Shown here: piece by piece, positions 19,024 through 59,469 of the stretch | Layout: every line of letters starts with the position of its first letter | Numbering within the stretch: the stretch's first letter is position 1 | DNA from: Macrostomum lignano | Lineage: Eukaryota | Assembly: GCA_002269645.1 (NCBI GenBank) | Contig: NIVC01001699.1 | Span: 1 to 64,000 of the forward strand | Direction of reading: 5' to 3' | DNA: 64,000 nucleotides | The notes under the pieces: model-generated | What the model saw: only the letters and a program-made list of their open reading frames with translations | Database searches by the model: none | What the model was told of the DNA's origin: nothing | Made by a program: the position numbers and the translations under genes

Positions 19024-19096
<73 letters not shown>

Positions 19097-29164: not shown

Positions 29165-29985
29165 CACAAGTATAACTTTGGCCATCAACTTTTTTGTCGA
29201 CTTTTCCATTAACTTCTGTTAACTATTCCATCAACTATTTTGTCAACTTTTCATGTTAGTAGGATAAATAACTTTATCCGTCAAATATTCTGTCAACTTT
29301 TCCGTTAACTTTTCCGTTAAGTATTCCGTTAACTTTTCTGTCAAGTATTCCAATAAATTTTTCCATTAACTCTTCCGGTAACATTTCCGTTTACTATTCC
29401 ATTAACTTTTCCGCCAAAAATCTCATCACTTTTCCATTAACTATTTCATCAACATTTATGCAAGTCTGTAAAATATATTCTATCATATTTTTTGTGTACT
29501 CTGAATGGAAAGTGTTAATTTTTTGCATAAGTGCAGTTTCCTTAGCAATTTTTTATACATACTTTAAATTTGTTGAGTATACACATGTACATGTATAAGT
29601 TATAAATAAAAAACACCCGCAAAAATTTCCAGCGCAACATGTTCCAGAATTTAATCGGTATTGCTACACTACCTGCACTACAACATCTGCACTTGTTCAT
29701 TGATTTATCTTTGTGAAATAAAGTGCTAGTACTAGGGAAAATAGAAAAGATGCATATTGCTACTAACTCAGACTTGTTTTTTCATTGATATATATAAGCA
29801 TGCAAACACAATAAATGATCAAAGAGCTACTTGCATGATGATCCTATTTGAGAAAGTCACATATGTTTTTTCAGAACAATAAATTGTTGACGGAAAATTT
29901 GATGGAATACTTGACGGAAAAGTTGACGGAAAAATTTATGGAAAAGTTGACGGAAAAGTTGACAGCCAAAGTTATACTCGTATTT
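29165..29985. mobile_element. Old foldback/MITE-like element with arrays of AACTTTTCCGTC/TT units
   Basis: AAGTATAACTTTGGC near 29168 is inverted at 29965-29980. Repeat arrays of about 12 bp lie in opposite orientation at 29185-29450 and 29885-29965. Confidence 0.55.
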
Positions 29986-32900: not shown

Positions 32901-33910
32901 TTCAAAATAGGAGATAAAATAGTACACTGTTTCTTCCTATATTCTATAATCTTTATTGCATTTATATGCAACATTGTAAGGTCTACATTGTTGGCTTTGC
33001 TATACATCTAATTTTGTGCCTTAATCTTATATTTATTAATAAATATGACCATGTTTGCCTTTGCTTTAATAGGTTGAGTCTAAGGATTGAGGAATGATAA
33101 GTTATAGAGAATAACCTAAGTTTTGAATATTGGCTTTGGATCTATAAACTATTTCCCTATCATATAACATATTACTTTTATCTTTTTGTAAGTTTATAAT
33201 AATAGGCCTGCTTAGTTTTAATTGCCCTTAATAATTCTGGAGCTTAATACATTTTCTATCAATTTTTAATTTGTAGGCCTATATTTATTTTTACAAGTAT
33301 GCCTTTTAAGTTCATTCTAATAGGTATATACTCTAACCCATATACTTTGCTCCTAAAATCCTAAAGCACAATAAATATAGACCAATAATCCTATATTCTA
33401 TAAACCCTAAGCTATATCAGGACTTGAATGATAGTTTTATGACAGTCTTGTCAATATGTTTACAAAATAAAAATTTGAAGAAAAAGTAGGTTTTTTGCAA
33501 ATGAATAACTTTGCAATGTAATTACATAGAAAAAAACAAATATGAACTAGAAAGAAAAGAAAAAAAACTTTTCATAGAGAAAACATTTAAAAAATAATTA
33601 CTTGGCTTTCATTAGGATAATGCAAACTGTCATCTTTTTCATCAAAATAGCTTTTTTGAAAATGACACAGAAAGGTACTTTTGTATTTTTAAATTTTCAT
33701 TGGCCAAGGCCTATATTTCAATTAGTCTATAATAAATTTACTTTTATTAGGAGCAACTAATTAGAAAGACAATATATGTATGCAAAACCTCTAAAATCAT
33801 ACTTGCTATATCTATATGGCTTAGTTTTTGCTAAAAAAAACTTAGGGTAGCAAATGAAGGTGCAGAGGGTAGCAAATGAAGAGTCAAAAGGGTAGAAGTG
33901 AAGATTCAGA

Positions 33911-34461
33911 GGGAAACAACTGAAGAGTTGGGGGAGAAGCAACTGAAGAGTTGGGAGAGAAGCAACTGAAGAGTTGGGAAAGAAGCAACTGAAGAGTTGG
34001 GAGAGAAGCAACTGAAGAGTTGGGAGAGAAGCAACTGAAGAGTTGGGAGAGAAGCAACTGAAGAGTTGGGAAAGAAGCAACTGAAGAGTTGGGAGAGAAG
34101 CAACTGAAGAGTTGGGAGAGAAGCAACTGAAGAGTTGGGAGAGAAGCAACTGAAGAGTTGGGAGAGAAGCAACTGAAGAGTTGGGAAAGAAGCAACTGAA
34201 GAGTTGGGAGAGAAGCAACTGAAGAGTTGGGAAAGAAGCAACTGAAGAGTTGGGAGAGAAGCAACTGAAGAGTTGGGAGAGAAGCAACTGAAGAGTTGGG
34301 AGAGAAGCAACTGAAGAGTTGGGAAAGAAGCAACTGAAGAGTTGGGAGAGAAGCAACTGAAGAGTTGGGAGAGAAGCAACTGAAGAGTTGGGAGAGAAGC
34401 AACTGAAGAGTTGGGAGAGAAGCAACTGAAGAGTTGGGAAAGAAGCAACTGAAGAGTTGGG
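33911..34461. repeat. Minisatellite, 23-bp unit
   Basis: Unit GGGAGAGAAGCAACTGAAGAGTT, about 24 copies. Confidence 0.95.
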
Positions 34462-34722
34462 AGGGTAGCAACGGAATATTTGCAGAAAAGATTTAAGCTA
34501 ATTGGCGAGGGATCTTGTCCCTTGGGTTTTTGCTCTTCGGTTATACAGGCACATACCTTTACTCCAGACATACAATGTGGGTTGCTTGCTTAGTGTAATC
34601 AGTGCCATCAAGATAACGTTGTATTTAGCGGCCACGCCAAGTTTTACTTAGCAAATTCTAATAGCAAACATGCGCATATTTACAGGTGAGACAACAATCG
34701 TTACCTTGCTAGCATAGGCACA

Positions 34723-37207
34723 ATGAACAGATTCTATTGGTCCAGTTCAGATCTGGCACAGTCGGAGTCGCTCATCCTACAGCAGGACGGAGTCGGCTTA
34801 TATGACGGCGACACTCGTTTATCGGCGTTCGACTCCGGCCGGCTGACCCTTACCACCCACCGGGTGCTCTGGTGCGACAAAAATGACGTCATTGCCTTCA
34901 ACTTGAAGGACGTGAAACGGGTTCGCTCGGAGACTGGCGGCCTGTTTAAATCCGCTAAACTGGTGGTCAACTTTCACGCCAAGGACCCGTCGGATGCTTG
35001 CTGGCGACAGGTAGATTACATCTGATAGCATCTGGGTAGCACCTGGTCTCTGATGAGTCAGTGGGTAGCATCTGGTCTCTGATGAGTCAGCGGGTAGCAT
35101 CTGGTCTCTGATGAGTCAGTGGGTAGCAGCATCTGGTCTCTGATGAGTCAGTGGGTAGCAGCATCTGGTCTCTGATGAGTCAGTGGGTAGCATCTGGTCT
35201 CTGATGAGTCAGTGGGTAGCATCTGGTCTCTGATGAGTCAGTGGGTAGCATCTGGTCTCTGATGAGTCAGTGGGTAGCATCTGGTCTCTGATGAGTCAGT
35301 GGGTAGCATCTGGTCTCTGATGAGTCAGTGGGTAGCATCTGGTCTCTGATGAGTCAGTGGGTAGCATCTGGTCTCTGATGAGTCAGTGGGTAGCATCTTG
35401 TCTCTGATGAGTCAGTGAATAACATCTGGTCTCTGATGAGTCAGTGGATAGCATCTGGTCTCTGATGAGTCAGTGGGTAGCAGCATCTGGTCTCTGATGA
35501 GTCAGTGGGTAGCACCTGGTCTCTGATGAGTCAGTGGGTAGCATCTGGTCTCTGATGAGTCAGTGGGTAGCATCTGGTCTCTGATGAGTCAGTGGGTAGC
35601 ATCTGGTCTCTGATGAGTCAGTGGGTAGCAGCTGGTCTCTGATGAGTCAGTGGGTAGCATCTGGTCTCTGATGAGTCAGTGGGTAGCAGCTGGTCTCTGA
35701 TGAGTCAGTGGGTAGCATCTGGTCTCTGATGAGTCAGTGGGTAGCACCTGGTCTCTGATGAGTCAGTGAATAGCATCTGGTCCTTGATGAGTCAGTGGGT
35801 AGACTGGCAACAGACTTGAGTCAGAGAGAAAGGATCTAAGCTGATAAGCGAAGAATATTCGCTCTTTAGTCATGCACTGTACTGAGCAGGCCGCCCCCTT
35901 CCCTCCCGGCATGCAGGGCGGACCGCTGGCCAAGTCCGATCAGGACTATATAAAAATTGCCTTCCGTCAGGCTGGCGACATCGAGTTCCTAGCCGGCATT
36001 GAGGAGGCTCTGCGCAACAAAGTCTGGGCTAAGCAGGCGCCGGCTGCGGCTTCGCAGCGTCACTTCGGCATCGGCGGCATCGAGAGGCGCATGGCTGAGC
36101 AGCGTAAAACTGCGGACAGGAGCATCGCCGAGGCGTTCGACGATTTGGACGCGCTGATGCGCCTAGCCGAGCCTATGGTGTCCATGACCAAAGCGGTGGC
36201 GCAGCGGATGCGGGACAAAGCTCCGCCTGAGGATGAAGCTGCTCAGCTCAAACAGCACCTGCTGGCTATGGGCGTGCAAGATCCAATTACTAGAGAGCAG
36301 TACGGTGGCGGATCGCATTATTTTAATAGCCTGGCCAAGCAGGTTAGCTGATAGTGTGTTCATTTTATTAGCCTGGTAGCGAAAGGCGGAGTCCTGCTGA
36401 GTGAGTGAGTAGTGAATGGCGGAGTCCTGCTGAGTGAGTGAGTAGTGAATGGCGGAGTCCTGCTGAGTGAGTGAATAAGGAATGGCAGAGTCCTGCTGAG
36501 TGAGTGAATAAGGAATGGCAGAGTCCTGCTGAGTGAGTGAATAAGGAATGGCAGAGTCCTGCTGAGTGAGTGAATAAGGAATGGCAGAGTCCTGCTGAGT
36601 GAGTGAATAAGGAATGGCAGAGTCCTGCTGAGTGAGTGAATAAGGAATGGCAGAGTCCTGCTGAGTGAGTAGGGAATGGCAGAGTCCTGCTGAGTGAGTG
36701 AGTAGAGAGTGGCGGAAAAGCTCGCATACAGGACAGCATAGACACCTATATCACCGCAACTTTCCTCAACAGGTGAGCGAATTCCTAGAGCAGCCGCTTC
36801 GCGAACGCAGCGGCGTAATGACCCTGACAGACGCCTACTGCCTGTACAATCGGGCTCGGGGACTCGACCTGATCTCGCCGGAGGATCTGGTTGCGGCGGC
36901 GCGGGCCATGAGCCAGCTGGGCTTGGCAGTCAGGCTGCACACCTTCGATAGCGGCGTTATGGTGCTGCAGCTGGCCAGCCACAATCAGCAGGCGGCGCTG
37001 GAGTCAGCGGCCGAGGCTGTCAGGCAGCGGGGCCACCTCACCGCCCAGGAGCTGTCCAGAGCTGCCGGCCTGTCCGTCACGCTGGCCAGAGAGCGGCTGC
37101 TGCTCACTGAAGCAGCCGGGCTCACCTGTCGCGACGACGCCGTCGAGGGACTGGCTTTTTATCCTAATCTGTTCGACACGTTTCCAGTTGAGACTGTGGC
37201 AGAATAG
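34723..37207 (+). CDS. VPS36: Vacuolar protein sorting 36 (ESCRT-II subunit), about 391 aa, 3 exons (34723-35010, 35890-36342, 36773-37207)
   Basis: GLUE-domain start (MNRFYW...GRLTLTTHRVLW), YIKIAFR, FGIGGIER, IAEAFDDLDALM, LTDAYCLYNRARGLDLISPEDL and DDAVEGLAFYPNLF. Phase-0 GT-AG introns; the exon 2 acceptor was chosen to preserve phase. Confidence 0.95.
35025..35800. repeat. Intronic minisatellite, 29-bp unit (VPS36 intron 1)
   Basis: Unit CATCTGGTCTCTGATGAGTCAGTGGGTAG, about 26 copies. Confidence 0.95.
36380..36712. repeat. Intronic minisatellite, 33-bp unit (VPS36 intron 2)
   Basis: Unit GAATGGCAGAGTCCTGCTGAGTGAGTGAATAAG. Confidence 0.95.
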
Positions 37208-37277
37208 GTTGAAGTTCTATTTGTAGGAACTGTTTAAATATTATTTTGCCGCATACATCAGAATTTAGAGCTAAAGA

Positions 37278-38205
37278 CAGACTTTTGTAAGGGCAGACTT
37301 CTGTAAGGACAGACTTCTGTAAGGGCAGACTTCTGACAGACTTCTGTAAGGACAGACTTCTGTAAGGACAGACTTCTGTAAGGACAGACTTCTGTAAGGA
37401 CAGACTTCTGTAAGGACAGACTTCTGTAAGGATAGACTTCTGTAAGGACAGACTTCTGTAAGGACAGACTTCTGTAAGGACAGACTTCTGTAAGGACAGA
37501 CTTCTGTAAGGGCAGACTTCTGTAAGGGCAGACTTCTGTAAGGGCAGACTTCTGACAGACTTCTGTAAGAACAGACCTCTGTAAGGACAGACTTCTGTAA
37601 GGACAGACTTCTGTAAGGACAGACTTCTGTAAGGACAGACTTCTGTAAGGACAGACTTCTGTAAGGGCAGACTTCTGACAGACTTCTGTAAGGGCAGACT
37701 TCTGACAGACTTCTGTAAGGGCAGACTTCTGTAAGGACAGACTTCTGTAAGGGCAGACTTCTGTAAGGAAAGACTTCTGTAAGGACAGACTTCTGTATAA
37801 AAGGCTTCTGTAAGGACAGGCTTCTGTAAGGACAGACTTCTGTAAGGACAGACTTCTGTAGGGGCAGACTTCTGACAGACTTCTGTAAGGGCAGACTTCT
37901 GACAGACTTCTGTAACGGCAGACTTCTGTAACGGCAGACTTCTGTAAGGGCAGACTTCTGTAAGGGTAGACTTCTGTAAGAACAGACTTCTGTAAGGACA
38001 GGCTTCTGTAAGGACAGACTTCTGTAAGGGCAGACTTCTGTAAGGACAGACTTCTGTAAGGGCAGACTTCTGTAAGGGCAGACTTCTGTAAGGACAGACT
38101 TCTGTAAGAACAGACTTCTGTAAGGACAGACTTCTGTAAGGACAGACTTCTGTAAGGACAGACTTCTGTAAGGACAGACTTCTGTAAGGACAGACTTCTG
38201 TAAGG
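37278..38205. repeat. Minisatellite, 16/17-bp unit
   Basis: GACAGACTTCTGTAAG and GGGCAGACTTCTGTAA variants. Confidence 0.95.
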
Positions 38206-38628
38206 CAAAATACAAGTATGCGAAAATTTGTGGCTCCATCTTACATACCTGACTCAAAAATGATGCCATTAATGCTTATTAATATGATTGCTTATTGCCA
38301 TGTTTTTTTGTTTATACTTAAATAAATATATTCGATTTGATTACTTATGCACAATACAGAACGAAATATTGATGATAAAGTTCATTCAATTGTCTTACAG
38401 AGCCTTTGTTTTAACTAAAATTTGAAGAAAAAAATTGTCTTTCTGATCTGCCTAATTTTAGTAGTGCGTCCAGCACGTTACTTAAAGCAGTTTCTGTAAA
38501 AACAATAACAAGCGCTGTCAATTTGAAGGTCATAAAAGGTAGATAAACTTACTTCTGAAATGCAAGTATATTTCCTTTGCATTTCTTTGTTTATTTGCGC
38601 TTCTAACTCTTATTGATTGACTGACAAA

Positions 38629-39427
38629 TGAGAATCGCCCCTCACTACCCTTTGAGAATCGCCCCTCACTATCCTATGAGAATCGCCCCTCACTATCCTA
38701 TGACAATCGCCCCTCATTATCCTATGAGAATCGCCCCTCACTATCCTACTAGAATCGCCCCTCACTATCCCACTAGAATCGCCCCTCACTATCCTATGAG
38801 ATTCGCCCTTCACTATCCTATGAGAATCGCCCCTTCACTATCCTGTGAGATTCGCCCTTCACTATCCTACTAGAATCGCCCCTCACTATCCTATGAGAAT
38901 CGCCCCTCACTATCCTATGAGAATCGCTTCTCACTATCCTATGAGAATCGCCCCTCACTGTCCTATGAGAATCGCCCCTCACTGTCCTATGAGAATCGCC
39001 CCTCACTATCCTATGAGAATCGCCCCTCACTGTCCTATGAGAATCGCCCCTCACTATTCTATGAGAATCGCCCTCACTATCCTATGAGAATCGCCCCTCA
39101 CTATCCTATGAGAATCGCTTCTCACTATCCTATGAGAATCGCCCCTCACTATCCTATGAGAATCGCCCCTCACTATTCTATGAGAATCGCCCTCACTATC
39201 CTATGAGAATCGCCCCTCACTATCCTATGAGAATCGCTTCTCACTATCCTATGAGAATCGCCCCTCACTATCCTATGAGAATCGCCCCTCACTATTCTAT
39301 GAGAATCGCCCTCACTATCCTATGAGAATCGCCCCTCACTATCCTATGAGAATCGCCCCTCACTATCCTATGAGAATCGCCCCTCACTATCCTATGAGAA
39401 TCGCCCCTCACTATCCTATGACAATCG
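38629..39427. repeat. Minisatellite, 24-bp unit
   Basis: Unit ATGAGAATCGCCCCTCACTATCCT. Confidence 0.95.
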
Positions 39428-39687
39428 CTCCTTATGTCACTTTCTATCTTTTATCCTTAGCAAGTACCTCTGTTCTTATTCTTACTATTCGGTATTTTAC
39501 TGGCTCCTACGATTGAAAACTGCCTTGTTATTCTATGTAATGAAAGCCCTATTCGCCCCTGAACTTCATCGATTGGTTAAAAATCGCCCTTTAACACAGC
39601 TGTAAGAATCGCAGGATATCTCATCTGCTAGGAGTAAATCATTTAACCATAATAGATAGAATTTGAAATCCCTGTCTCGCCTTGCAG

Positions 39688-40086
39688 GCGTTCGCGTCGC
39701 CATTCGAGGCTGATCCGCAGCTATCGCTGAAAATCCTCTGCGAGCCGGCACCCAGCAGCCGCTTCCGCTACGTTGGCGAAGTGGAGCAGTTTCGCGCCAG
39801 CGCAGGGCCCAAAGCCATTGGCAGCGTTCTGTATGGCGGCCGGCCGGTAGACAAGAACAGTCGCGTCACCCTGCAGCTGCAAGCGAATCGGCCGACAGAC
39901 GCCGCTTTGTTCGCCTTTCTGGTCAGAGCGAACCAGTCTGACAAGCTGCACGTGTTCGAACTGATTGGTATCGACTGCGAGTGCGGCTTCCTGTACTCTA
40001 AGTTCCGGTTGGACAATGGACCGCAGGAGCTCAAGTGAGTCGCTGTAGATAGATGAATAGATAGATAGATAAATGATAGATAGATG

Positions 40087-40147
<61 letters not shown>

Positions 40148-40557
40148 ATGATAGATGGATAGATAGTAGATAGCGAGAAAGAGCGAGCGAAGCGAGCTCT
40201 TTCGAGCTTGCTTGCCGCAGCCAATCAAGCTGAAAGCACGCACACAAGATCACCGGAAACGATTAAGGCAGCTGGAAAGCCAATGGGCGCGGTAAGCGCT
40301 TTTATCCAGAGGAACTACCTGCTGGAACCAGCCATGCCGAACGAAAATCAGACTACTCAAGTAGTGCAAAAGAGTACGTGCAACTACCGAGAAATCTAAT
40401 TTTCGTAACCGCTCCGGTGCAGGTCCTGGCTATAGATAGTAGATAGCGAGAAAGAGCGAGCGAAGCGAGCGAATAGATAGATGGATAGATAGATAGATAG
40501 ATAGATAGATAAATGATAGATAGATGGATAGATAGATAGATAGATAGATAGATAAAT

Positions 40558-40628
<71 letters not shown>

Positions 40629-40742
40629 GGATAGATAGATAGATAGATAGATAGATAAATGATAGATAGATGGATAGATAGATAGATAGATAGATAGATA
40701 AATGATAGATAGATGGATAGATAGATAGATAGATAGATAAAT

Positions 40743-40833
<91 letters not shown>

Positions 40834-40834
40834 G

Positions 40835-40867
<33 letters not shown>

Positions 40868-40869
40868 AT

Positions 40870-40960
<91 letters not shown>

Positions 40961-43900
40961 GATAGATAGATAGATTTATAAAAGTAAAAAATCAATAAAA
41001 CAGGCTTATGATCTGCTTTCAGTAACACAATCCTGATTTTCCCATCTTAGTGTTAGAATTTTTCGTGTCAAGTCAAACAGAACAGTGTTCCGTCTTTCCA
41101 CTTTAAGTCGCCGTTGAGTCCGTACTCATTGGAGTCAATGCGGACTCAATGCTTGGCTGAAAGTGTAAAAATGACGATTAAAGCGCTTCTCAAAATTCGA
41201 GTAGCTACAGTACTCAGTACTCAGAATCCGATGCTTAGCTAGCAAAGCTAAGGTCAATTATGAGTCTGCATCACGTGCCAGTAGCTGTTGTCAACAACTG
41301 CTGCACTCCATGCGCCAGCTTTGGAGTACTACCAAAGAGACTCTATAGATTAATCTTAATGAGCTGGAAACAGTGTGGAGCGTCGCACGCTTTATAAAAA
41401 ATGTTTCTTAACGTTGAAATGAAAAGCTTTTTGCCTCTTTCCGCTTCGCAGTTGTTTCTTTCTTCTGTTTTTATCGTTGTGAGGAATCGCTGCGTTGGCG
41501 AGAGGCAAAATTTCTCATTAATTATCTTGGCATGCATTTTTCATAAGCAGGCGTGCTTTGGTACGCCAAAGCATTCTGATGGCTTCTGCACGCAGATTTA
41601 GACTTAGTGTCTGGAATAGAAACTTCTGCAGGAAAGGCATGGATTTTTTAATATAGAAAAAACGTCAATGCTACCAAAACTCATGGCCGTTTAGACTTAG
41701 CATCTGAAATATATGCTGTATTTTTTCAAATCCACGGCTTCCAAATCCTGGAGATTTCATGCTTAAAATGCTTCAAAGACAACGCTTTGAGTTCTAGCCC
41801 CAGCATCTGGAGTGAAAACTACAGCCAAGTCCATGGAGTTCTAATCCTTAAACCAGGAACAGCAACGCTGATGAGAAGTCATTGAGTTCTAGTCCCAGCA
41901 TCTGGAGTGAAAACTACAGCCAAGTCCATGGAGTTCTAATCCTTAAACCAGGAACAGCAACGCTGATGAGAAATCTTTGAGTTCTAGACCCAGCATCTGG
42001 AGTGAAAACTACAGCCAAGTCCATGGAGTTCTAATCCTTAAACCAGGAACAGCAACGCTGATGAGAAATCTTTGAGTTCTAGTCCCAGCATCTGGAGTGA
42101 AAACTACAGCCAAGTCCATGGAGTTCTAATCCTTAAACCAGGAACAGCAACGCTGATGAGAAGTCATTGAGTTCTAGACCCGGGATTGTTAATTCAAAAC
42201 TACTGCGAAATGCTTGGAGTTTTGTATGGCGTGCTATTTTACCTGGCCTGCTCTAACAGCTATTTATTATGCGCCGTGCCTCGTCTACCTGCAGTTTTTC
42301 ATTCCGGAAAAATGAAAGAAACGGCCACGCCACACCATAACTATTGCGCCCAGATCTAGACTCAGCCAGTTCTTTGGATGAAGTTCCCCTCATATTTTAT
42401 GCTATTGCCTCGCGTGCAACTGGCCAATAAGACTATTGCTAATGCTCACTAGCTGGACTATTGAGTTTCATTGTTGAATAGTGGCATAGCTCAGTTTTTT
42501 TTCTGCTTTTTTTAATTGAATTGTCCAACGGCTGTGCTGTTCAATCATTCTGTTTTAACGAGCGACTTGCCTCAGCTAGTTATATGAATGGCGTTGATAA
42601 TAGTTCCGCCGACTATTGGACTGGCGCCAGTATCCAGTTGGAACTGCAAATTTTATTTTTAGCTTTACGATTATAGAAAAAAATAATAATACAAGGTCGG
42701 GGTTGACTTTGACACGAGCGCGTTTACGAGTAATCGTTTTCGTCTTTAAAATGGAAAAAATACGAGTATGTTTATTTTTTAAATTTCAGTTCATATTTTT
42801 CTTTAAAAAATTATCATAGCTCTAACTATGATGTTTTGTTTAAAAAAAATATGATTCTTTTGCAGTGGTTCAGTGGAAAAAAATCACGCATTTTTATGAT
42901 AGAACGAAGCAGAGAAACATTAGTATGCTCTGGTTAACAATTGGCTGGTGGTGAAAACGTATGGCATATGTTTTTGGGTGTTCTATAAAAATAAAAGCAC
43001 AAAAACTCTATAGCTCAATTAATTTTAAAAAGTTATCTGAAAAAAATTGTTGTATGTTATCACTTATTTGTATCAGATGATAGCGGTTGGTTGTGCTGCT
43101 TCTGTTGGCTGTTGTTGACTCTTGCTTGCTAATCAACCGAATCATCAGCCGGTGCAGGCTGTGTGATTAACTGTTCCAATCACTTCAATCTTCACGCGGC
43201 CGCCCATGCCCGGCGCTCCGCCCACTCCGCCGCGCGCTCCTCGCGATAGATTCGGCGCCGCGTAGCTGCCGCCGCCGCCTCCGCCACGAGGTTCCATGCC
43301 GTCCACTCCTCCGCCGCTGTAGCCGCCTCCGCCTCCGCCGCCTCCATTTTGAGAGCCTAGCTTGCCACCTCCGCCGCCGCCTCCGCCGTAGCCGCCGTTG
43401 GCAGGCTTTCCAACTCCGCCGCTCCATCCGCCTGTCCGGGACCGTCCGTCTAGACCGGAATTTGGACCACTGAATTGCCAACCGTCCGATAGCCAGCCGG
43501 CTCCACCACCGCCAAGACCGTGGTTGTTGTTGGTGCTGACGCTGGTTGGTTGCGGCGCGCCCTGGCCGCCGACGCCGCCGTAACCGACACCGGTAGCGTC
43601 GCTAACCGACTGAGCGCCGTTCTCACTGTCTGTCGCGTTCCCGCCGTTGGTCATTTCGGCAGCGCCGCCGCCTCCACCAGCGGCCAGCAGCAGTACGGGC
43701 GTACCAGTCGCGTTTTTATACACAAAGCTACCGCCTCCGCCTCCGCCGCCGTTGTCAACAGTACTTTGGTCGGCGCCGCGTCGGCCGACGACGATGGTCA
43801 AATTGTCGGTCTCGCTAAGCGTGAATGCCGCTTCTTTATAGGCGCCAAGACCGCCAGTTCGGCTTAACTGACCGCCGCCATGGGCGCCCCAGGCGCGGAT

Positions 43901-45847
43901 GCGGTAGCAACCGGCGCCAAGGACTGGCGTGTAGTACATAGGCGTTCCCGTGTGGCTCGGCGTGTCATCTGAGGGAAAAAGAAAATTGTAAACATTTCGA
44001 CTGGCTTTGTTGCACTAAATTAGAAAGTACACTACCATTGAAGGCTTCCAAATGGGCTTCCAATAGTGACAGTTAAAATAGATATACATCGAATCCACTG
44101 ATCAGCATTTGCGTTCAAATGTTTCATATTACAAATCGATTTGAAATCCTTTAATTGGCTCCATCCGTCAGAAATTATACAATTAGAGTGTGTCATCCTG
44201 TTCACCTATGGAACAAATGTTTGGACCGATGTTGGAAACATTATAAGGACAAATAAAGCAACATTTTCAGATGGTTAAGCTGATAAGCGTTTAAGCTAGC
44301 TCGTATATAGTTAATCACTATGCCATTATCTCGGGCAGAAATCCTTACCTGACGCTTGCGGTAACTTTTTAAAAGCGTATTTTCTCCTCTATGCTTTTTA
44401 GTGCAAGCTAAACCACACCAAAGAAGAATTTTATACCTTGCTAGATATCTTCCGTCACTGTAGCTAGGCAAACAATGAGTTGTTTAAATAATAATCCTAA
44501 CTACACAATTACAGCCTGCTTAGTATCAGATTGCCAATATGCTGCGACTAAAAGCTTATTGGTAAATCAAACATCATTTGTTTGTAGAGCTTCAGCTAGA
44601 GAGATGGTGCGAGTAAGAAACGAATTATCCATAGTAGAGAGTTGCTACCTCCTCGTGAAACTCTACTGCTCCTGGTAGAAGAATCGATGAAAGCTACTAC
44701 TCGGGCCTCTCACCGTTCTCGTAGACTGCGTCTAGCTGGCTCTGGCAGCCGGCCCAGGTGCTGTTCCGATCCTTGCTATAGTAGGCGGCGGTGCAAGCCG
44801 ATCCGCCCGGCGTCTGTTGCACCCAAAGCTGGCGCAGGTCGCAAGCGGAGCCTAGTAGGCACTGGCCGCCGGCGCCCAACTGGTAGACTGTGCAGGCTTC
44901 CAAATAGGCGCACTCGGTTGCGCAAACGTCCGGCGAAGAGATCGGGGCAAAGCTACGAAAGGTGGCATTCAACGGGGTTGGAACGCTCGGTGTCGTGTTG
45001 GCGCAAAATCCGTCGGCTAGTCGGTTGAACACGATGCGATATCCGCTGGCGTCTTGGGCCAGCGTTGACAATAAGATAGCTGCTATGAGTTGCAGGCTCA
45101 TGCTAATGCAAATTCCTCTCTGCTAGATCTGCGCGTGGCTTCCTTTGTTTGGTGTATTGCTTAGCCTTGGCAACCGCTTGTCAATTATATGCCGGTGGGT
45201 ACTTGTTTTTTACCGCCCTTGGGAGCCCACTGCGGGGAAGACTTTATTGGATAGCAGCAATGGACTAGCAAATCATGTCTTATGTCTGATTGGCCAGTGT
45301 TTGATGCTGATGCCAATTCCCAAAAAGTTCCTACGGAAGGTATTGTCTATTGTAAAATAGGCCTCAACGCATGCTGCAGTATCATGCCTACGTTGCGATA
45401 TGGAAAAGGCTGTTTTTGGCTTTCATGAAAGAAGTTTGACGGGAACGAGTTTTCTTGTTATGAAATATGAAGTAACCGTTTATACAAAAAATACCGATTT
45501 CTATTGCAATAAATGTATTTCAAACATGCAGAAAGTTTCAACCTGTTTGCTGACTGTCTTTTATTTCAAATATAAATACAAATTGGCGTGTACACAGAAT
45601 GTGTTGCATTTCTGCTTCCGTTCCTTCTGCCAGCTTGTCAGATCGACCTACGAGCGTACAGCCAAGTAAACTAGGACAAATCTCTGGGCTATCCAGTTTC
45701 ACTATCAGTTGAGATTTTATGTCGTTATACATGTACTTTTACAAATTCTGATAAAATTTAAAACTTTTTATCCTTTCTCTTGAAAGGATTTCCTAGAGAC
45801 TATGATAGACAGACAGACAGATGGACAGACAGACAGACAGACAGATG

Positions 45848-45901
<54 letters not shown>

Positions 45902-47397
45902 TGGACAGACAGACAGACAGACAGATGGACAGACAGACAGACAGACAAATATATAACCTCAATGAAATTCGTCTCTCTTTTACAGGCTTGATAAGCATTG
46001 TATCATGAAGTACAAGAAGGGTGATATTAAACAGGCCGTTCAAAACCGATGGGACAAATTGAAAGGCATGTCCTGGTATCACCCCCATCTAAGTAAGTAG
46101 GTTCTATAGTTTTATAATGCAATTGTTCCTTTTGAAATACTTTTTGTGCTGCCATCGTATCATTACTTTCTAATATTCTAGATCACTCACGTTTTTCAGT
46201 CTGTTCCTGCCATCTGTCAGTCTGTTCCTGTCATCTGTCAGTCTGTTCCTGTCATCTGTCAGTCTGTTCCTGCCATCTGTCAGTCTGTTCCTGCCATCTG
46301 TCAGTCTGTTCCTGTCATCTGTCAGTCTGTTCCTGTCATCTGTCAGTATGTTCCTGTCATCTGTCAGTATGTTCCTGTCATCTGTCAGTATGTTCCTGTC
46401 ATCTGTCAGTCTGTTCCTGTCATCTGTCAGTCTGTTCCTGTCATCTGTCAGTCTGTTCCTGTCATCTGTCAGTCTTTTCCGTCTTTTGTTTGCCTATCCT
46501 TCTGCCTGATTGTCTACGTCTGTTTGCCTGTCAATCTTCTCACTCTCCAAATCTACTGTCCCTGCTGTCTTAGTTGTCAAAACAGCTCGTCACAACCTCC
46601 TCCCCATATAGATCAGTGGATGGACGACCTGTCCCGCTGCTCCAGCCTGAAGGAATGCGGCGGCTCGGTCCGCATCCGGTTCTTGCTCTGCCCCATGCTG
46701 CCAGATGAGTCTGCTGACGGCCAACAACAGCTGGACTTCTCAGCTGCTGTTAGCGTTGTCACTGAGACTATCTCTTGTGAGTAGTGAGCAATTATAGCTA
46801 ATTATATGCTCATCTGTGTACTTTTTATAGACCAGCTCGAAGGAGTTCCCGCCCTGACAATTCCATTTCCAATGTGTTGTTTTGTTCGCAGTTAAAACAC
46901 TACTTCGCAGTAGTAAATCGGTGCAAACCGTTTTGTTTCAAACTTCCAGCCAGTTCCAGCTCGAGTGCCGACAGCCTGAAAATTCAGGACTTCAATCCGA
47001 CGACCATAATTCTTTCGACCGACGATCCCAGCCTGAAAACCAATTCGATCTGGGTTGAGCTGAAAGACGCAGTTAGTAAGGTTCAACATTTTACCTGCAA
47101 TGCTTAAAAATTGAAAGTTTAAAGGAAAAATCCTTAGTTACCTTTGAGAACTTACTGACATTGAATTGAGTATTTTTGTGATTTTTTCTTGCTTTTAGAT
47201 AAGTCGGACAAAGTGTTTGTATACATTTTAATTAGCAACCAACGGCTGGAGTGCGAAGTCAAGGCTTCCAATGGGGTGAGTTGGAATAGTTTGCATTGTA
47301 TTTCATATTTCATAAATGGTGAGCAATCCTTGTTGCTTATTTGTTGTTAATCAGACCTGTGAACTGTTTGACTCCGGTGTAAGGCTTATAGACACAA

Positions 47398-47448
<51 letters not shown>

Positions 47449-47507
47449 GTCTGTCTTAGTGTCTGTCTGTCTGTCTGTCTATCTGTCTGTCTATCTGTCT
47501 GTCTTAG

Positions 47508-47604
<97 letters not shown>

Positions 47605-47651
47605 TTCAGTTTGTCTGCCTTAGTGTCTGTCTGTCTTTCAGTTTGTCTGCC

Positions 47652-47692
<41 letters not shown>

Positions 47693-48211
47693 TTCAGTTT
47701 GTCTGCCTTAGTGTCTGTCTGTCTATCTTAGTATCTGTCTGTTTTTCTGTCTCATTCTGGATCATCAGCTGGTGTGAGTTTGTTAGACTCCGACCTGAAT
47801 TTAGACTAAATACGGTATTATATATTTTCCTGCAAAGCCAGCCTTGGAAAGATTTTCTAAGCAACGAAAGTTTCCTCTCTGTCTACTTGGGCCGCCCTCC
47901 GCCCCCTTATTTACCAGAAACTGGTCAAGTTCTCTCCGCCCAGCCTGGACGAAGTGCGGAAGGTCTGCAAGGACGAGCGTATTGCCGCCACTTTTAAAGT
48001 TAAAAAATTGTCGCCACGCGATCGAAGCGACGACGATGGCCAGCTTGATGAGGCGGAGAGTCTGGAGTGCAACCTGCTGCTAGTGACGCCGGCCCTGCCA
48101 TCCATAGGCCAGCGGCCGCCAAAGCAGGCCCGGCTGCGTCGGAACGCGACCGAACCCGATGCGAACGATTTCTCTTACTTGAAGGATCTCCGTGGAGACT
48201 ATGACAACTGA
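39688..48211 (+). CDS. Divergent Rel/NF-kB-family transcription factor (RHD DNA-binding domain plus IPT domain, no ankyrin repeats); start exon not located
   Basis: Phase-consistent exons 39688-40034, 45986-46092, 46612-46776, 46950-47075, 47199-47275 and 47842-48211 (one frameshift near 47904). Motifs [82 protein letters not shown] and a basic [10 protein letters not shown] occur in the same order as in RelA/NFKB1. Confidence 0.8.
40047..40975. repeat. (GATA)n microsatellite blocks (40047-40172, 40432-40975)
   Basis: Seen directly in the sequence. Confidence 0.95.
41787..42180. repeat. Tandem repeat, 95-bp unit, about 4 copies
   Basis: TTGAGTTCTAG recurs at 41787, 41882, 41977, 42072 and 42167. 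Confidence 0.95.
43145..45101 (-). CDS. Secreted protein of about 403 aa: signal peptide, PAN/apple-like domain and ALK/LTK-type glycine-rich domain; exons 44714-45101 and 43145-43968
   Basis: Hydrophobic N-terminus; PAN-like cysteine spacing ([12 protein letters not shown]...C); [35 protein letters not shown] and GGGGGYSGG motifs; phase-1 GT-AG junction. Confidence 0.85.
45803..45947. repeat. (GACA)n microsatellite
   Basis: Seen directly in the sequence. Confidence 0.95.
46197..46473. repeat. Intronic minisatellite, 21-bp unit
   Basis: Unit GTCAGTCTGTTCCTGTCATCT. Confidence 0.95.
47400..47750. repeat. (TGTC)n microsatellite
   Basis: Seen directly in the sequence; intronic. Confidence 0.95.
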
Positions 48212-48774: not shown

Positions 48775-51700
48775 GCGATGTTGTATCGAAAGACTTGTTG
48801 AGAGGGTTTAAGCTATGGAGGGAAAAGAAGGCCCATTAACGTATTTTATTTTTCTAAAATACATTTAAATATGCTTCTAATAAACTGAAAGTAGTATATA
48901 CGCAAAATCGGTTCATCCAGAAGATTGCTGCCAACCGATTTCGCCTTGTCTCAATTTCTCTGCCAATAAATTGGCTTTAACCGATTTGCACTAGCTACTA
49001 CTAACTAAATCTGAGAAAGCCAGTAGTATTCGAGTCTATTTCTCAAAAAATCTTGTGGCTAATATCAATATTGAAGATACTCTTATATTCAAAGCATTTT
49101 AGGAGTAGCATGTTTGGGCAAAATCTTCATAAACAATTACGCAGATGTACGAGCGTATGTCTTACTATTTTAACGAAATTGTAAATTTTACATTTGTTTC
49201 AAACTTTTTTAAAAAAAACATTAAGCGCCTTACTAAATGCATAAAAACAAGTACAAAGACAATGTATATATTTGATTATTGCTTTTCTATGCTGTTGTGT
49301 TTGTTTGTTTCTTTTATTTATCACGAATACAGTGTGTAAAACCTAATATTACTAGAAGTAGACTGGAAGCGTATTCCGTATATTAGAAAGTTTTATCAAT
49401 AATTTTTTAAGCTTGCATTGTCATCCACTTAGTGAGTCTATATTAAATTCATATTTTGAGTTTAAGAACTTGCCATCGAGCTTAATTAGTATCCCTTTAT
49501 TGGGCATATTACTAATTGGCTGGCGAAGCATTGAATTAACAAAACACCGCTAATTTACTCCCGCCTTTTACCCACGCAGACTGACTAAAAAAATTAACGT
49601 CTAGAACTATCTCAGTCCTATATACTAACATGGATTTCAACGACGTAAAAATTACACTTCGAGCGGTGCTGCTGTCCACAAAGAGTCGTTCGATCCCGAT
49701 TAATGAGCTGCCCTACGAATTCAAGGGGCTATCCGGCAAGTCGCTTGATTATAAGCAATTCGGCTACGCTTCGCTCAGCAAAATGCTGCTGGACATGCCA
49801 GACACTGTCCGACTGTCGGACGGCGGCCGGCTAGTTGTGGGACGATGAGCCAGTAAGTAGTATAGGAAAAAATGCGAGCGAAGCGAGAATTTTTTTCTAT
49901 GCTGCTTACTTTTGCGAAATCGTCCCTGATAAGATGTAACGCCGTTGCACACACTAAAAATGACGTTTTTCAACTTTTAAACGCTGCCAATAAAAAACGG
50001 TACGACCGATTTACAAACAGTTTTTGCCAAAATGTGTCAAAGACCTAGCGCTATCGGATGCACAATAGTTGGTTGCCATGGCAACGCGTTTTGGTTGCCA
50101 TGGCAACCAAAAACTGCGTTTTTTCTACATTGTCAAAAAATTTGATCTCAAAAAATAAGGATTGAGAATATGGCAGCGCTTAGCGAGTGGGCTCAGTAAG
50201 CGCGGGCATTCAAACGCTGCAATGATCAGAAATGGATTTTTTGATTGTACTTTAACTTTTAGGGTAAAAGTACAAAAAACGTGTTTTTTGAGGTCGAAAA
50301 ATCGGCATTTTTTTCAACTTTGCCTCACCGCAGCGAAAAGGACGCGCTTTCGCGCGGCCTTTGAGCTGCCTCCTAGCCTTAAAAACACTTAAGGCTGTTT
50401 GATGCGCTAAATTTTTTTCGGCTAAAATGTACTTTTCACATGGCTGCCTATCTGCACTTTAAAAGTACAAATTTTTAGTGCACTTTTTAGAGGCCTATGG
50501 CGTCGAGATTAAAAACTTTATTTTTTAATATTTCTACACCAAATTACTCAAATGGATGTCTTCTATTCGGAAACATTGAGATCTGGCCGATTGGGCCATC
50601 AATAACCTGCCCAGGTGCCAAAGAGTGCCTAAAAACGACATTTTCGAAAAATTGGGTCACGTTTTTAAAAAGTAGTCCCAAAAAATAAGAAAGTGTTTTA
50701 TGCTACGGTGTTGAGACTTTAACACAACGTGTCAAACATTTGGAAATTTGTTTTCCTAAATTTTCTAAGCATTTGGACCTACCTGTGCTGAACAGTGACC
50801 CGGAAACCGGGGAAAAAAGAGGCCGGGGGCTCTGCAGAAAATCAAACGTTGTTAAGGAAATTTTTTTAAAATGGGGCGAATTTTTTCGAGTGTAGTGTCA
50901 AATTGTAGCCCATCGGATGCCCTTTTGAATGACATAAGACACTCTGGAAAAAACCCCTGTTAACAGGTACTTTTTACCTGTTAAGTGAAAAACGGCCCAT
51001 TTGGGGGTACAAACTTTGAAGTCGAAAAATAAGAAATTTTGCGCACCGATTTTTCTGCATTTTCAATATTGTTTAGTCGAATAGCTAAAGTTTCACCGGT
51101 CATACGCCAATATGGCTGGAAAATTCGTATTTTTGAGCAAACTGCATCTGATTATTAAAAATGCAATTTTTCGGCCAATTTTTTGTACATGTTTTTCAAC
51201 CTTGCCCGTACTGCAGCGAAAAGGACGCGCAATAGCGCGGCTTTTGAGCTGCTGCCTAATGTCAACAACACCTGGGGCTTTTAGATGCGCTATAATTTTT
51301 TGGGCTAAAATGTACTTTTGACATGGCTGCCTATCTGCACTTTAAAAGTACAAACCGTTTGTGCACTTTAAAGAGGCTTATCCTATACAGATGCAAATCT
51401 TGATTTTTTCAATTTTTCAACCCAAATCACTCAAATGGATGTCTTTTATTCGAAAATGCTGAGATCTGCTTGATTGGGCCATTCATTGCTGCTCTATATG
51501 GCTACAAGGGTCAAAAACAGTGTTTATGAAAATTTGGGTCACGTTTTCAAAAAGTAGTCTCCAAAAATAAGAAAGTGTTTTAAGCTACGGTGTTGAGATT
51601 TTAACAAAACGTGTCAAACATATGGAAATTTGTTTTCCTAAATTTTCCAAGCATTTGGACCTACCGGTGCGGAGCAGTGACCCGGAAACCGGGGAAAAAA

Positions 51701-58327: not shown

Positions 58328-59469
58328 CTAGTTCACGGCCTTTCCAACGCCAACACGAGCCATATTGAGAGCCTAATCCGCAATCAACTACCCAGCGGCC
58401 GGGACAAGCGTGGCACCAGGGGTAGCAGTTTCCGGCGCCTCTCATCGGATAGCAGGCCGATATTTAGGCGACTTCCGGTACCCAGTTTAATAGACGATCA
58501 AGCGGGTAGAAGGAGCCTCGATAGGAGTTCTGCTGGACAGAGCCAGACCAGCACTGGCCGCAGCGTTCGTCCTATTGGAATTTGTAAGTGTAACTGGTGT
58601 CCTGTTGCTTTGGATAGCTGACTAGCTCGTAGCTAGATAGATAGACTGATGGATCTTTTTTATATAATAACCCAAGCGCGCGGATATTTTTTGTTCTTTT
58701 TTAGATCCAAGTCTTAATCGCGCCCTGCAGAACGCTCAGAAAGATTGCAACGCTGCGATTAAACAACAACAGCAGCGGCGGCTACAACAGCAGCAGAAGC
58801 AGCAGCAACAACAACAACAGCAGCAGCAGCAGCAGAAGCAACAACAACAGCAGCAGCAGAAGCAGCAACAACAGCAGCAGCAGAAGCAACAACAACAGCA
58901 GCAGCAAAAGCAACAACAACAGCAGCAGCAGCAAAAGCAACAACAACAGCAGCAGCAGCAGCAACCAGAGAAGCAGCAGGCAGCAGTACAATTACAAAGT
59001 CTAGGCAACCTGCCCGACAGCGTCGTCCGTTCCGTACTTGCAGCCTACCTGCGCGCGCATGACCTGGGCGCGGAGCGCGACGCCACCTGGCAGGCGGTTG
59101 CGGCTGCACTGGCCGGCTCCTGGCTCAGCCCTTGCCAGGTCTCGCCCGAACAGGTTATCCGGGCCGAGCGCCACTGGTCCGACCTGTTCACTCTACAGTT
59201 CCGCTGGCCCAGCGATATCTATCTGCCAACTGCGGCCGTACTGTCGCCTAGAAACAGCCTCGCTAATGTTAGTGACATCATCAGCGACCAGGAGGCCGAC
59301 CTGCTGATCGTTGGACTGCTCAATTCGCAACCGGCCAGTCGCGTCTTGTTCTGATAATTTTTACCTGGATATCAAACTAATTAACACCTTTCTGTCTGCC
59401 TTATGTCTCCCTCTGCCTTTCCCCCCTCTCTCTCTATCTGGCAATGCCTCCCCTCTGTCTCTATCTGGC

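What the first reader, a model, noticed from the sequence alone, without database searches (positions are those of the whole stretch)
39688..48211. Highly divergent Rel/NF-kB-like factor lacking the conserved DNA-recognition cysteine
Seen: RHD and IPT motifs in order across six phase-consistent exons, missed by the ORF track as one gene. The RxxRxRYxCE loop reads [10 protein letters not shown], so the redox-sensitive Cys is replaced by Gly. The protein ends about 20 aa after a basic NLS-like patch, with no ankyrin repeats or long activation domain, resembling a processed p50/p52. From memory, NF-kB has been reported missing in several flatworm genomes (to be verified), so a divergent retained member would matter for immunity and regeneration.
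Basis: partly seen in the sequence, partly recalled or inferred. Interest (0 to 1): 0.7.

Follow-up and report, generated by a model that had tools for sequence, protein, structure and literature searches.

The report
Divergent Rel-homology gene in a flatworm
This is a real, six-exon gene of the flatworm Macrostomum lignano whose front half is a very divergent Rel/NF-kB-type DNA-binding domain (with glycine in place of the usual redox-sensitive cysteine), which matters because flatworms have been reported to lack NF-kB; its back half cannot yet be identified.

Summary
The window is Macrostomum lignano DNA. The six exons are real: all GT-AG, phases consistent. The spliced 371-aa product is 100% identical to GenBank PAA64929.1 ('hypothetical protein BOX15_Mlig030977g2, partial').

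No frameshift at 47904 is needed; a clean acceptor sits at 47918.

[quoted passage not shown] - 0 of 1000 shuffles reach the observed score against a Rel profile.
- The alignment-guided AlphaFold model is confident there, and its top 33 PDB matches are all Rel/NF-kB.
- All five introns lie within 2 codons, and in the same phase, as introns of a bird NFKB1 gene (P<1e-5).

The recognition loop reads RFRYVGE. Arg, Arg, Tyr and Glu are kept and Cys is replaced by Gly in all three genomic copies.

The claimed IPT half (208-371) has no significant sequence or structural support; only its position and the introns suggest it.

There are no ankyrin repeats or activation domain. A distance tree places the protein between Rel/NF-kB and NFAT, inside neither.

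The copies are intact, with dN/dS 0.2-0.5. The start codon probably comes from the spliced leader.

This is a new divergent variant of a known family; divergent RHD genes were already reported in planarians in 2026.

The parts
39673..39687 (+). Polypyrimidine tract plus AG acceptor (tgtctcgccttgcag|) at the 5' end of the annotated gene. Proposed spliced-leader trans-splice acceptor.
   Evidence: The sequence is conserved in all three genomic copies, with an in-frame stop 8 codons upstream. The GenBank models are RNA-seq derived and cut at trans-splice peaks (PMC5730564). [quoted passage not shown] ATG|GCG TTC would be in frame. This is inferred, not shown.
39688..40034 (+). Exon 1, residues 1-115 plus 2 nt of K116. 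Encodes most of the RHD N-terminal domain, including the recognition loop and the H-x-x-E-L-I-G-x-D-C-x-x-G-F motif (39949-39990).
39760..39780 (+). Recognition loop L1, R25-F-R27-Y28-V-G30-E31. Gly30 (39775-39777) replaces the conserved Cys. An insertion of about 8 residues (VEQFRASA) follows.
45986..46092 (+). Exon 2, residues 116-151. Encodes the strand C-I-M-K-Y-K126-K127 (counterpart of NLGIQCVKK) and helix 1 of the insert.
   Evidence: The preceding intron is phase 2, at the codon aligned to p65 S112 and the NFKB1 Gly.
46612..46776 (+). Exon 3, residues 152-206. Encodes helix 2 of the insert, the last strands of the N-domain and the start of the Ser-rich linker.
46950..47075 (+). Exon 4, residues 207-248. 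Encodes the Ser-rich linker, SLKIQD and the first predicted strands of the C-terminal beta-rich region.
47199..47275 (+). Exon 5, residues 249-274 ([25 protein letters not shown]). Present in all three GenBank copies and skipped in the UniProt fused models.
47918..48211 (+). Exon 6, residues 275-371 plus the stop codon. Contains KLVKFSPP, the basic patch [10 protein letters not shown] (48113-48142) and NDFSYLKD (48164-48187).
   Evidence: The phase-0 intron before it coincides with the NFKB1 and NFAT introns that precede the FAIVFKTP strand.

Best explanation
[quoted passage not shown] It consists of little more than the Rel homology region.

Shown:
- Residues about 11-207 are an RHD N-terminal (DNA-binding) Ig-like domain of the Rel/NF-kB type.
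- This domain carries the RFRY..E loop, the H..EL(I/V)G.DC..G(F/Y) motif, the KK pair and a two-helix insert.
- The gene has an NFKB1-like exon-intron structure.

Inferred:
- The protein binds kappaB-like G-rich half-sites through R25, R27, Y28, E31 and K126/K127.
- Because Cys is replaced by Gly30, binding would not be subject to the redox or alkylation control that acts on Cys38 of p65 and Cys62 of p50. That control is established knowledge recalled from memory, not tested here.
- The beta-rich C-terminal 160 aa occupies the place of the dimerisation domain and probably pairs two subunits.
- Lacking ankyrin repeats and an activation domain, the protein would act like a p50/p52-type subunit: a repressor, or an activator only with a partner.
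- Translation probably starts at the AUG donated by the spliced leader trans-spliced at 39688.
For: 1. The gene model is exact: 100% identity to an RNA-seq-derived GenBank CDS.
2. Pfam RHD_DNA_bind is the only family hit in all three copies (E 1.7e-4 to 7.6e-4). The only meaningful PDB sequence hits are c-Rel and p65.
3. A Rel N-domain profile scores 17.9 bits and 0 of 1000 shuffles reach that. A Rel-class HMM scores 14.8 bits while an NFAT-class HMM gives no hit. hhalign gives P=0.0025 against Rel and 0.23 against NFAT.
4. AlphaFold2 with a 32-sequence RHD alignment gives pLDDT 80-92 over most of residues 11-207. Foldseek's top 33 PDB hits are all Rel/NF-kB RHDs (E down to 1e-11); NFAT hits score about 1e-6.
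5. Independent of protein scoring, all 5 introns lie within 2 codons and in the same phase as introns of bird NFKB1 (P<1e-5 in 100,000 randomisations). The figures are 4 of 5 for RELA (P=5e-5) and 2 of 5 for two NFAT genes.
6. There are three syntenic copies, all with intact ORFs and identical exon structure. dN/dS is 0.22-0.48, and Gly30 is kept in all of them.
Against: - The Pfam score is below the gathering threshold.
- phmmer against 1.84 billion representative proteins finds nothing but the protein itself.
- The confident AlphaFold model was built from an alignment of RHD proteins, so it and the fold search are not independent of the hypothesis. The single-sequence model failed (pLDDT 35).
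- The C-terminal half has no significant similarity to RHD_dimer by HMM, hhalign or PDB search, and is modelled at pLDDT 30-48. Four MAFFT runs give different alignments for it.
- The linker Arg (p65 R187) is not conserved, and loop L1 carries an insertion.
- The neighbour-joining tree does not nest the protein inside Rel/NF-kB.
- dN/dS rests on few substitutions (3-14 non-synonymous, 4-10 synonymous).
- DNA binding, dimerisation, nuclear import and the SL-donated start are all untested.
Confidence: 0.75

Rival explanations
1. It belongs to the NFAT/NFAT5 branch of the RHD family rather than to Rel/NF-kB.
For: NFAT5 is the well-conserved RHD gene in planarians (PMC13563047). NFATs also lack the loop Cys (Thr instead). 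The neighbour-joining tree attaches the protein to the internode between the two clades, so NFAT affinity is not excluded by phylogeny. Two of its introns are shared with NFAT genes.
Against: - The loop reads RFRY, not RAHY or RARY.
- The NFAT-class HMM gives no hit while the Rel-class HMM does. hhalign gives P=0.23 against 0.0025.
- Identity is 14-17% to NFATs against 19-22% to Rel/NF-kB.
- Foldseek ranks 33 Rel/NF-kB chains above the first NFAT chain.
- The protein has the helical insert after the KK strand, which NFATs lack in the alignments.
- Two introns (in the insert region and before the KV..F strand) match NFKB1 and RELA but not the two NFAT genes examined.
Confidence: 0.1
2. It represents a separate, flatworm-specific RHD lineage that is neither Rel/NF-kB nor NFAT. 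Its N-terminal RHD domain is joined to a remodelled or replaced C-terminal domain that is no longer a canonical IPT dimerisation module.
For: - The tree shows a long branch at the Rel/NF-kB-NFAT internode in 200 of 200 bootstraps.
- No homologue was found at E<=0.001 among 1.84 billion representatives.
- The C-terminal half is about 50-60 aa longer than a canonical dimerisation domain and is unrecognisable to profiles and to AlphaFold.
- Planarian RHD genes are also described as long-branched (PMC13563047).
Against: The NFKB1-like positions and phases of all five introns, including the two inside the C-terminal half, argue for descent from a canonical Rel/NF-kB-type gene along its whole length. 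Short motifs in the right order (SLKI; V.F..PP; LRR...F.YL.D) are compatible with a divergent IPT domain.
Confidence: 0.25
3. It is a decaying or non-functional relic (a transcribed pseudogene) of an RHD gene.
For: - Extreme divergence.
- Loss of the Cys and of the linker Arg.
- No start codon in the genomic exon, so the CDS is annotated 'partial'.
- dN/dS is as high as 0.4-0.5 between some copies.
Against: - There are three copies with uninterrupted 1113-nt reading frames, canonical splice sites and identical structure.
- All dN/dS values are below 1, with 14 non-synonymous to 10 synonymous changes against a neutral expectation of about 3.4:1.
- The base-contacting residues are retained in every copy.
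- The missing ATG is explained by the ATG-ending spliced leader.
- The annotation is transcript-based.
Confidence: 0.07
4. The RHD resemblance is chance, and the protein is an unrelated beta-rich protein.
For: All sequence scores are sub-threshold: Pfam 20-22 bits against a gathering score of 27, and PDB E=0.12-0.36. The confident structural model is alignment-guided.
Against: - RHD_DNA_bind is the single hit among 24,736 Pfam families in three copies.
- 0 of 1000 shuffles reach the observed profile score.
- Hallmark motifs appear in the correct order.
- Intron positions and phases coincide 5 of 5 with NFKB1 (P<1e-5), and this does not depend on residue scoring beyond the alignment.
Confidence: 0.03

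Closest known systems
NF-kB p50/p52 (processed NFKB1/NFKB2 products)
   Same: - The architecture is reduced to the Rel homology region, without an activation domain.
- The loop is RFRYV.E, with the same Val as p50.
- There is a helical insert of two helices after the KK strand.
- All five introns match NFKB1 introns in order and phase (2,1,1,1,0), including the phase-0 intron before the FAIVFKTP strand that RELA lacks.
   Different: - It is not made by processing. The gene itself stops at residue 371, with no glycine-rich region, ankyrin repeats or death domain.
- Cys62 is replaced by Gly.
- Loop L1 has an insertion of about 8 residues.
- The first RHD intron (YPQVK|ICNY) is absent.
- The dimerisation domain is not recognisable.
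- Identity is only about 20%.
RelA/c-Rel/Dorsal (class II Rel proteins)
   Same: These give the best pairwise and profile similarity: c-Rel and p65 are the only meaningful PDB sequence hits, and tree distances are lowest to Dorsal and RelA (0.85-0.88). The motifs HxxELVGKDCxDG(F/Y) and CVKK are shared.
   Different: - There is no C-terminal transactivation domain.
- There is no clear KRKR-type NLS after the last strand.
- Cys is replaced by Gly.
- The linker Arg (p65 R187) is replaced by a Ser run.
NFAT/NFAT5 (TonEBP)
   Same: It has an RHD fold and no Cys in the loop. Two ancient introns are shared: the phase-2 intron before the ..GI strand and the phase-0 intron before the ..VPPY strand.
   Different: - The loop is RFRY rather than RAHY or RARY.
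- A helical insert is present.
- The NFAT profile gives no hit.
- Structural matches are weaker.
Divergent RHD genes of the planarian Schmidtea mediterranea (PMC13563047)
   Same: These are flatworm RHD-containing genes described as highly divergent, with long branches and low similarity to immune NF-kB proteins.
   Different: Macrostomum belongs to an early-branching flatworm lineage (stated from general knowledge).

Membership tests
Rel homology domain (RHD) family | N-terminal RHD DNA-binding domain (Pfam PF00554), an s-type Ig fold | tested here: met
   - RHD_DNA_bind is the only Pfam hit in three copies, but below the gathering score (20-22 bits against 27; E 1.7e-4 to 7.6e-4).
- 0 of 1000 shuffles reach 17.9 bits.
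- The alignment-guided AF2 model has pLDDT 80-92, and Foldseek's top 33 hits are Rel/NF-kB RHDs.
- 5 of 5 introns are shared with NFKB1.
Rel homology domain (RHD) family | C-terminal dimerisation domain (RHD_dimer PF16179, IPT/TIG fold) | tested here: inconclusive
   - No Pfam hit.
- Dimer-domain HMMs score no better than shuffles.
- hhalign gives P=0.3-0.5, and there is no PDB sequence hit.
- AF2 pLDDT is 30-48, although about 8 strands are predicted.
- Two introns in this half match NFKB1.
- Alignments are unstable.
Rel/NF-kB class | Recognition loop R-x-x-R-x-R-Y-x-C-E with base-contacting Arg, Arg, Tyr and Glu | tested here: met
   R25, R27, Y28 and E31 are present in all copies. The first Arg of the motif is Pro22.
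Rel/NF-kB class | Redox-sensitive Cys in the recognition loop (p65 C38, p50 C62) | tested here: not met
   Gly30 is found in all five M. lignano sequences. All 119 Rel/NF-kB proteins fetched have Cys and the 59 NFATs have Thr.
Rel/NF-kB class | Nuclear localisation signal just after the last strand of the RHD | tested here: inconclusive
   A basic patch [10 protein letters not shown] (340-349) exists. Depending on the alignment it is either a tail NLS or the counterpart of the conserved QLRR strand, in which case the protein ends 7 aa after F.YL.D with no NLS.
Rel/NF-kB class | Groups with Rel/NF-kB in a phylogeny | tested here: inconclusive
   A neighbour-joining tree on 144 N-domain columns shows a long branch attached to the internode between the Rel/NF-kB and NFAT clades in 200 of 200 bootstraps.
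NF-kB class I (p105/p100, Relish) | C-terminal glycine-rich region and ankyrin repeats | tested here: not met
   The ORF stops at residue 371 in all three copies (TGA). There is no ankyrin hit. The next gene downstream is a separate LOTUS-domain gene.
Rel class II (RelA, c-Rel, Dorsal) | C-terminal transactivation domain | tested here: not met
   No sequence extends beyond the Rel homology region.
NFAT/NFAT5 | RAHYETEG-type loop and similarity to NFAT RHD profiles | tested here: not met
   The loop is RFRYVGE. The NFAT HMM gives no hit, hhalign gives P=0.23, and Foldseek NFAT hits are about 5 orders of magnitude weaker than Rel/NF-kB hits.

The most novel reading that the evidence does not exclude
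Macrostomum retains a third kind of RHD factor. It keeps a Rel/NF-kB-derived DNA-binding domain but has lost the redox cysteine, the linker arginine, the canonical NLS and a recognisable dimerisation domain. It would therefore work outside the IkB/IKK logic (reported as missing from flatworms), perhaps as a constitutively nuclear or monomeric DNA binder whose start codon is supplied by the spliced leader.
Probability: 0.25. Interest if true: 0.65.

Novelty: new variant of a known kind. Interest (0 to 1): 0.5.

Why it matters
Surveys based on BLAST or on Pfam thresholds concluded that flatworms lost NF-kB along with the rest of the Toll pathway (PMC4484250, PMC11432056). This gene shows that an early-branching flatworm keeps, in three expressed copies, a gene descended from a Rel/NF-kB-type ancestor. 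The evidence is its intron structure and its DNA-contact residues. The protein is so divergent that databases carry it as a domain-less hypothetical protein.

It gives a concrete candidate for testing whether any NF-kB-like transcriptional response exists in a transgenesis- and RNAi-amenable regenerating flatworm. It is also a natural Cys-to-Gly variant of the recognition loop, useful for studying redox control of RHD-DNA binding.

The value is tempered because divergent RHD genes are now also known from planarians.

Tried and rejected
- phmmer of the protein against 1.84 billion representatives returned only the protein itself.
- The word-indexed search found only M. lignano copies.
- Single-sequence AlphaFold2 was unusable, with pLDDT 35.
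- The profile search seeded with six RHDs returned almost only NFATs. A second search seeded with Rel proteins was needed.
- HMMs of the dimerisation domain and of its e-f-g strands, scored against the C-terminal half and sub-segments with 1000 shuffles each, gave no signal. The first two script attempts failed on an hmmsearch option clash.
- hhalign of the C-terminal half was not significant, and the PDB sequence search of that half gave no hit.
- Genomic loci for P0002, Rhodnius Dorsal and Drosophila Dorsal were not on record. The mouse p105 isoform was only available as a transcript contig without introns.
- The neighbour-joining phylogeny did not resolve the class.
- I tested whether the upstream VPS36 gene carries the same transcription-unit name, which would indicate an operon. 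It does not: it is Mlig034134g1 or Mlig003168g1.
- Supplementary data of the planarian RHD paper are not held, so orthology to the Schmidtea genes could not be tested.

Full report
**Origin and gene model.** The region contains six + strand segments that join through canonical GT-AG introns with consistent phases. They are 39688-40034, 45986-46092, 46612-46776, 46950-47075, 47199-47275 and 47918-48211, giving 1116 nt including the TGA. The 371-aa product is 100% identical over its full length to GenBank PAA64929.1, 'hypothetical protein BOX15_Mlig030977g2, partial' of Macrostomum lignano. The annotated gene on contig NIVC01001699.1 spans exactly the coordinates of the finding. The acceptor ttatttaccag|AAACTG at 47918 continues exon 5 in phase 0.

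**Other database models.** UniProt holds two gene-finder models (A0A1I8GTN6, A0A1I8JI54). They skip exon 5 and read through into the downstream LOTUS/OST-HTH gene, which lies at 49615-49842 and 58328-58582 in the window. The GenBank annotation of this assembly is derived from RNA-seq, with gene boundaries cut at experimentally mapped trans-splice and poly(A) sites (PMC5730564). The gene is therefore transcribed.

**N-terminal half.** Pfam gives a single hit, RHD_DNA_bind. The E-value is 6.9e-4 (20.1 bits) for the whole protein and 1.7e-4 (22.1 bits) for residues 1-205, below the gathering score of 27. The other two genomic copies give the same single hit. The only meaningful PDB sequence matches are c-Rel and p65, and they are weak (E 0.12-0.85).

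My typed RelA query proved 100% identical to real p65 over the RHD.
- A Rel N-domain HMM scores 17.9 bits, while 1000 shuffles of the same residues reach at most 5.8.
- A Rel/NF-kB-class HMM scores 14.8 bits and an NFAT-class HMM finds nothing.
- hhalign gives P=0.0025 against Rel and 0.23 against NFAT.

Single-sequence AlphaFold2 failed (pLDDT 35). With a 32-sequence alignment of Rel, NF-kB and NFAT proteins, residues about 11-207 are modelled at pLDDT 80-92, apart from loop 25-53. The model has two helices at 127-142 and 149-159. Foldseek against the PDB returns p50, p65, c-Rel, p52, RelB and Gambif1 as the top 33 hits (E from 1e-11), with NFAT chains only from rank 34 (E about 1e-6). Because the model was guided by an RHD alignment, I treat it as consistent with the hypothesis rather than independent proof of it.

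**Gene structure as independent evidence.** I mapped exon junctions of a primate RELA gene, a bird NFKB1 gene, a Capitella NFAT-like gene and a Tetraodon NFATc gene onto their proteins. The intron positions were then placed on a MAFFT alignment made without reference to introns.

The M. lignano introns are:

| Position | Phase |
|---|---|
| within K116 | 2 |
| within N152 | 1 |
| within S207 | 1 |
| within N249 | 1 |
| between G274 and K275 | 0 |

All five lie within two codons, and in the same phase, as NFKB1 introns (VV-G-FANLG ph2; DRQLT-E ph1; YDS-K-APN ph1; KVQK-D-D ph1; DVHRQ|FAIVFK ph0). In 100,000 randomisations none reached 5 of 5. Four of five match RELA (P=5e-5) and two of five match the NFAT genes. 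In the HMMER and two of the MAFFT alignments, the phase-2 intron falls in exactly the codon aligned to p65 S112. Two of the matching introns lie in the C-terminal half. This argues that the whole gene descends from a canonical Rel/NF-kB-type gene.

**Recognition loop and contacts.** The loop reads P22-S-S-R25-F-R27-Y28-V-G30-E31 (39760-39780). In every Rel/NF-kB protein fetched (119) the corresponding residue is Cys, in NFATs (59) it is Thr, and in all five M. lignano sequences it is Gly. Copy g6 reads RFRYDGE. An insertion of about 8 residues follows the Glu. H88, the ELIGxDCxxGF motif and K126/K127 (counterparts of p65 K122/K123) are kept. The linker Arg (p65 R187) is replaced by a run of seven Ser. 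The roles of these residues in DNA contact and redox control are established knowledge for p50 and p65 that I recall from memory; they were not tested here.

**C-terminal half.** Residues 208-371 are predicted to be beta-rich, with about eight strands and one short helix, but at pLDDT 30-48.
- Pfam finds nothing.
- RHD_dimer-type HMMs score it no better than shuffles; the smallest fraction of shuffles reaching the observed score is 0.07.
- hhalign gives P=0.3-0.5.
- PDB sequence search finds nothing at E<=10.
- Different MAFFT runs align it to the dimerisation domain in different ways.

In one alignment, KLVKFSPP equals AIVFRTPP and the domain ends at NLLLV. That leaves a 39-aa tail whose basic patch [10 protein letters not shown] could be an NLS. 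In the other alignments, [10 protein letters not shown] equals [22 protein letters not shown] equals MQLRRPSDRE, and NDFSYLKD equals MEFQYLPD. A roughly 45-aa insertion then lies upstream and no NLS follows. The region is about 50-60 aa longer than a canonical dimerisation domain. I therefore report the IPT identity as inferred from position, strand content, short ordered motifs and intron conservation, and not as demonstrated.

**Class.** A neighbour-joining tree on 144 N-domain columns puts the two M. lignano sequences on a very long branch. The branch is attached to the internode between a monophyletic Rel/NF-kB clade and a monophyletic NFAT clade in 200 of 200 bootstraps. The protein does not group with NFAT, but it is not nested in Rel/NF-kB either. 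The Rel/NF-kB label rests on the RFRY loop, the helical insert, profile and fold-search preference, slightly higher identity (19-22% against 14-17%) and the NFKB1-like introns.

**Copies and selection.** GenBank holds two further copies, g4 (PAA61161.1) and g6 (PAA91999.1), on other contigs. Their synteny is the same: VPS36 lies upstream, a 403-aa minus-strand gene is nested in intron 1, and a further gene is called downstream, where the window has the LOTUS-domain gene. All three copies have intact 1113-nt frames and the same exon structure and 5' acceptor.

| Pair | dN/dS | Non-synonymous / synonymous changes |
|---|---|---|
| g2-g4 | 0.22 | 3 / 4 |
| g2-g6 | 0.41 | 14 / 10 |
| g4-g6 | 0.48 | 13 / 8 |

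Intron divergence is 3.7-4.6%. This is mild but consistent evidence of constraint, based on few changes.

**Start codon.** The first exon begins in phase 0 immediately after a strong acceptor. An in-frame stop lies 8 codons upstream, and upstream there is only satellite and AT-rich DNA. The first in-frame Met in the genomic CDS is in exon 2. The 35-nt M. lignano spliced leader ends in ...TTGCATG (PMC8629364). The Macrostomum SL is stated to contain the final ATG as a likely start codon (PMC10468722). Trans-splicing at 39688 would give ATG|GCG TTC GCG in frame, which explains why the CDS is annotated as 'partial'. This is an inference. The upstream VPS36 gene has a different transcription-unit name, so an operon is not indicated.

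**Literature context.** NF-kB, together with TLR, MyD88, IRAK, TRAF, IKK and IkB, was reported lost from flatworm genomes by BLASTp (PMC4484250). A 2024 survey found no p50/p105 in Platyhelminthes (PMC11432056). A 2026 study reports seven RHD transcription factors in Schmidtea. They are highly divergent and long-branched, and knockdown of the most Relish-like one is rapidly lethal (PMC13563047). I found no paper linking Macrostomum to an RHD or NF-kB gene.

**Verdict.** This is a real, expressed, triplicated flatworm gene for a very divergent RHD protein with Gly in place of the loop Cys and no ankyrin or activation domains. The IPT domain, the NLS, dimerisation, DNA binding and any role in immunity or regeneration remain to be shown.

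Noticed in passing
window 43145-45101, minus strand (exons 45101-44714 and 43968-43145), inside intron 1 of the RHD-like gene: A nested two-exon gene encodes a 403-aa secreted-looking protein: a signal-like N-terminus, a Cys-rich module, then a long Gly-rich region. It hits Pfam ALK_LTK_GRD just below threshold (E=1.1e-4, 22.8 bits against 24.5). The same nested gene is annotated in both paralogous loci (L007, L008).
   Followed up: partly
window 34723-37207, + strand: The upstream neighbour is VPS36/EAP45 (ESCRT-II). Its three exons (34723-35010, 35917-36342, 36773-37207) give the exact 382-aa GenBank protein PAA64928.1. Both introns are filled with short tandem repeats.
   Followed up: yes
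window 49615-49842 and 58328-58582, + strand: The downstream neighbour is a LOTUS/OST-HTH-domain gene. UniProt models A0A1I8GTN6 and A0A1I8JI54 wrongly fuse it to the RHD-like gene and skip exon 5 of the latter. As a result, the only domain shown for those entries is OST-HTH.
   Followed up: partly
window 37258-38210, 38630-39420, 40040-40970, 45810-45950, 46200-46470, 47400-47700: Dense tandem repeats lie in the intergenic region and in the introns. They include satellites with units of about 20-30 bp upstream of exon 1, (GATA)n in intron 1, (CAGA)n and (TCTG)n tracts, and a 21-bp repeat in intron 2. They differ in length between the three gene copies (intron 1 is 5951, 5900 and 7830 bp).
   Followed up: no
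window 41790-42180: About four tandem copies of a unit of roughly 110 bp (…gagttctagtcccagcatctggagtgaaaactacagccaagtccatgg…) lie inside intron 1. Their nature is unknown.
   Followed up: no
window 28000-34000: A 6-kb stretch has only 28-32% G+C, against 45-57% in the flanking sequence. It is followed by a long repeat array whose minus strand gives SQLFSCFSPNSSVASLPTLQLLL-type repeat ORFs (33757-34571).
   Followed up: no
window 4659-6291 minus strand; 18729-20566 minus strand: There are long ORFs (253-417 aa) rich in Gln, Pro and Ala with no Pfam family at E<0.01. They may be exons of other genes or of a mobile element.
   Followed up: partly
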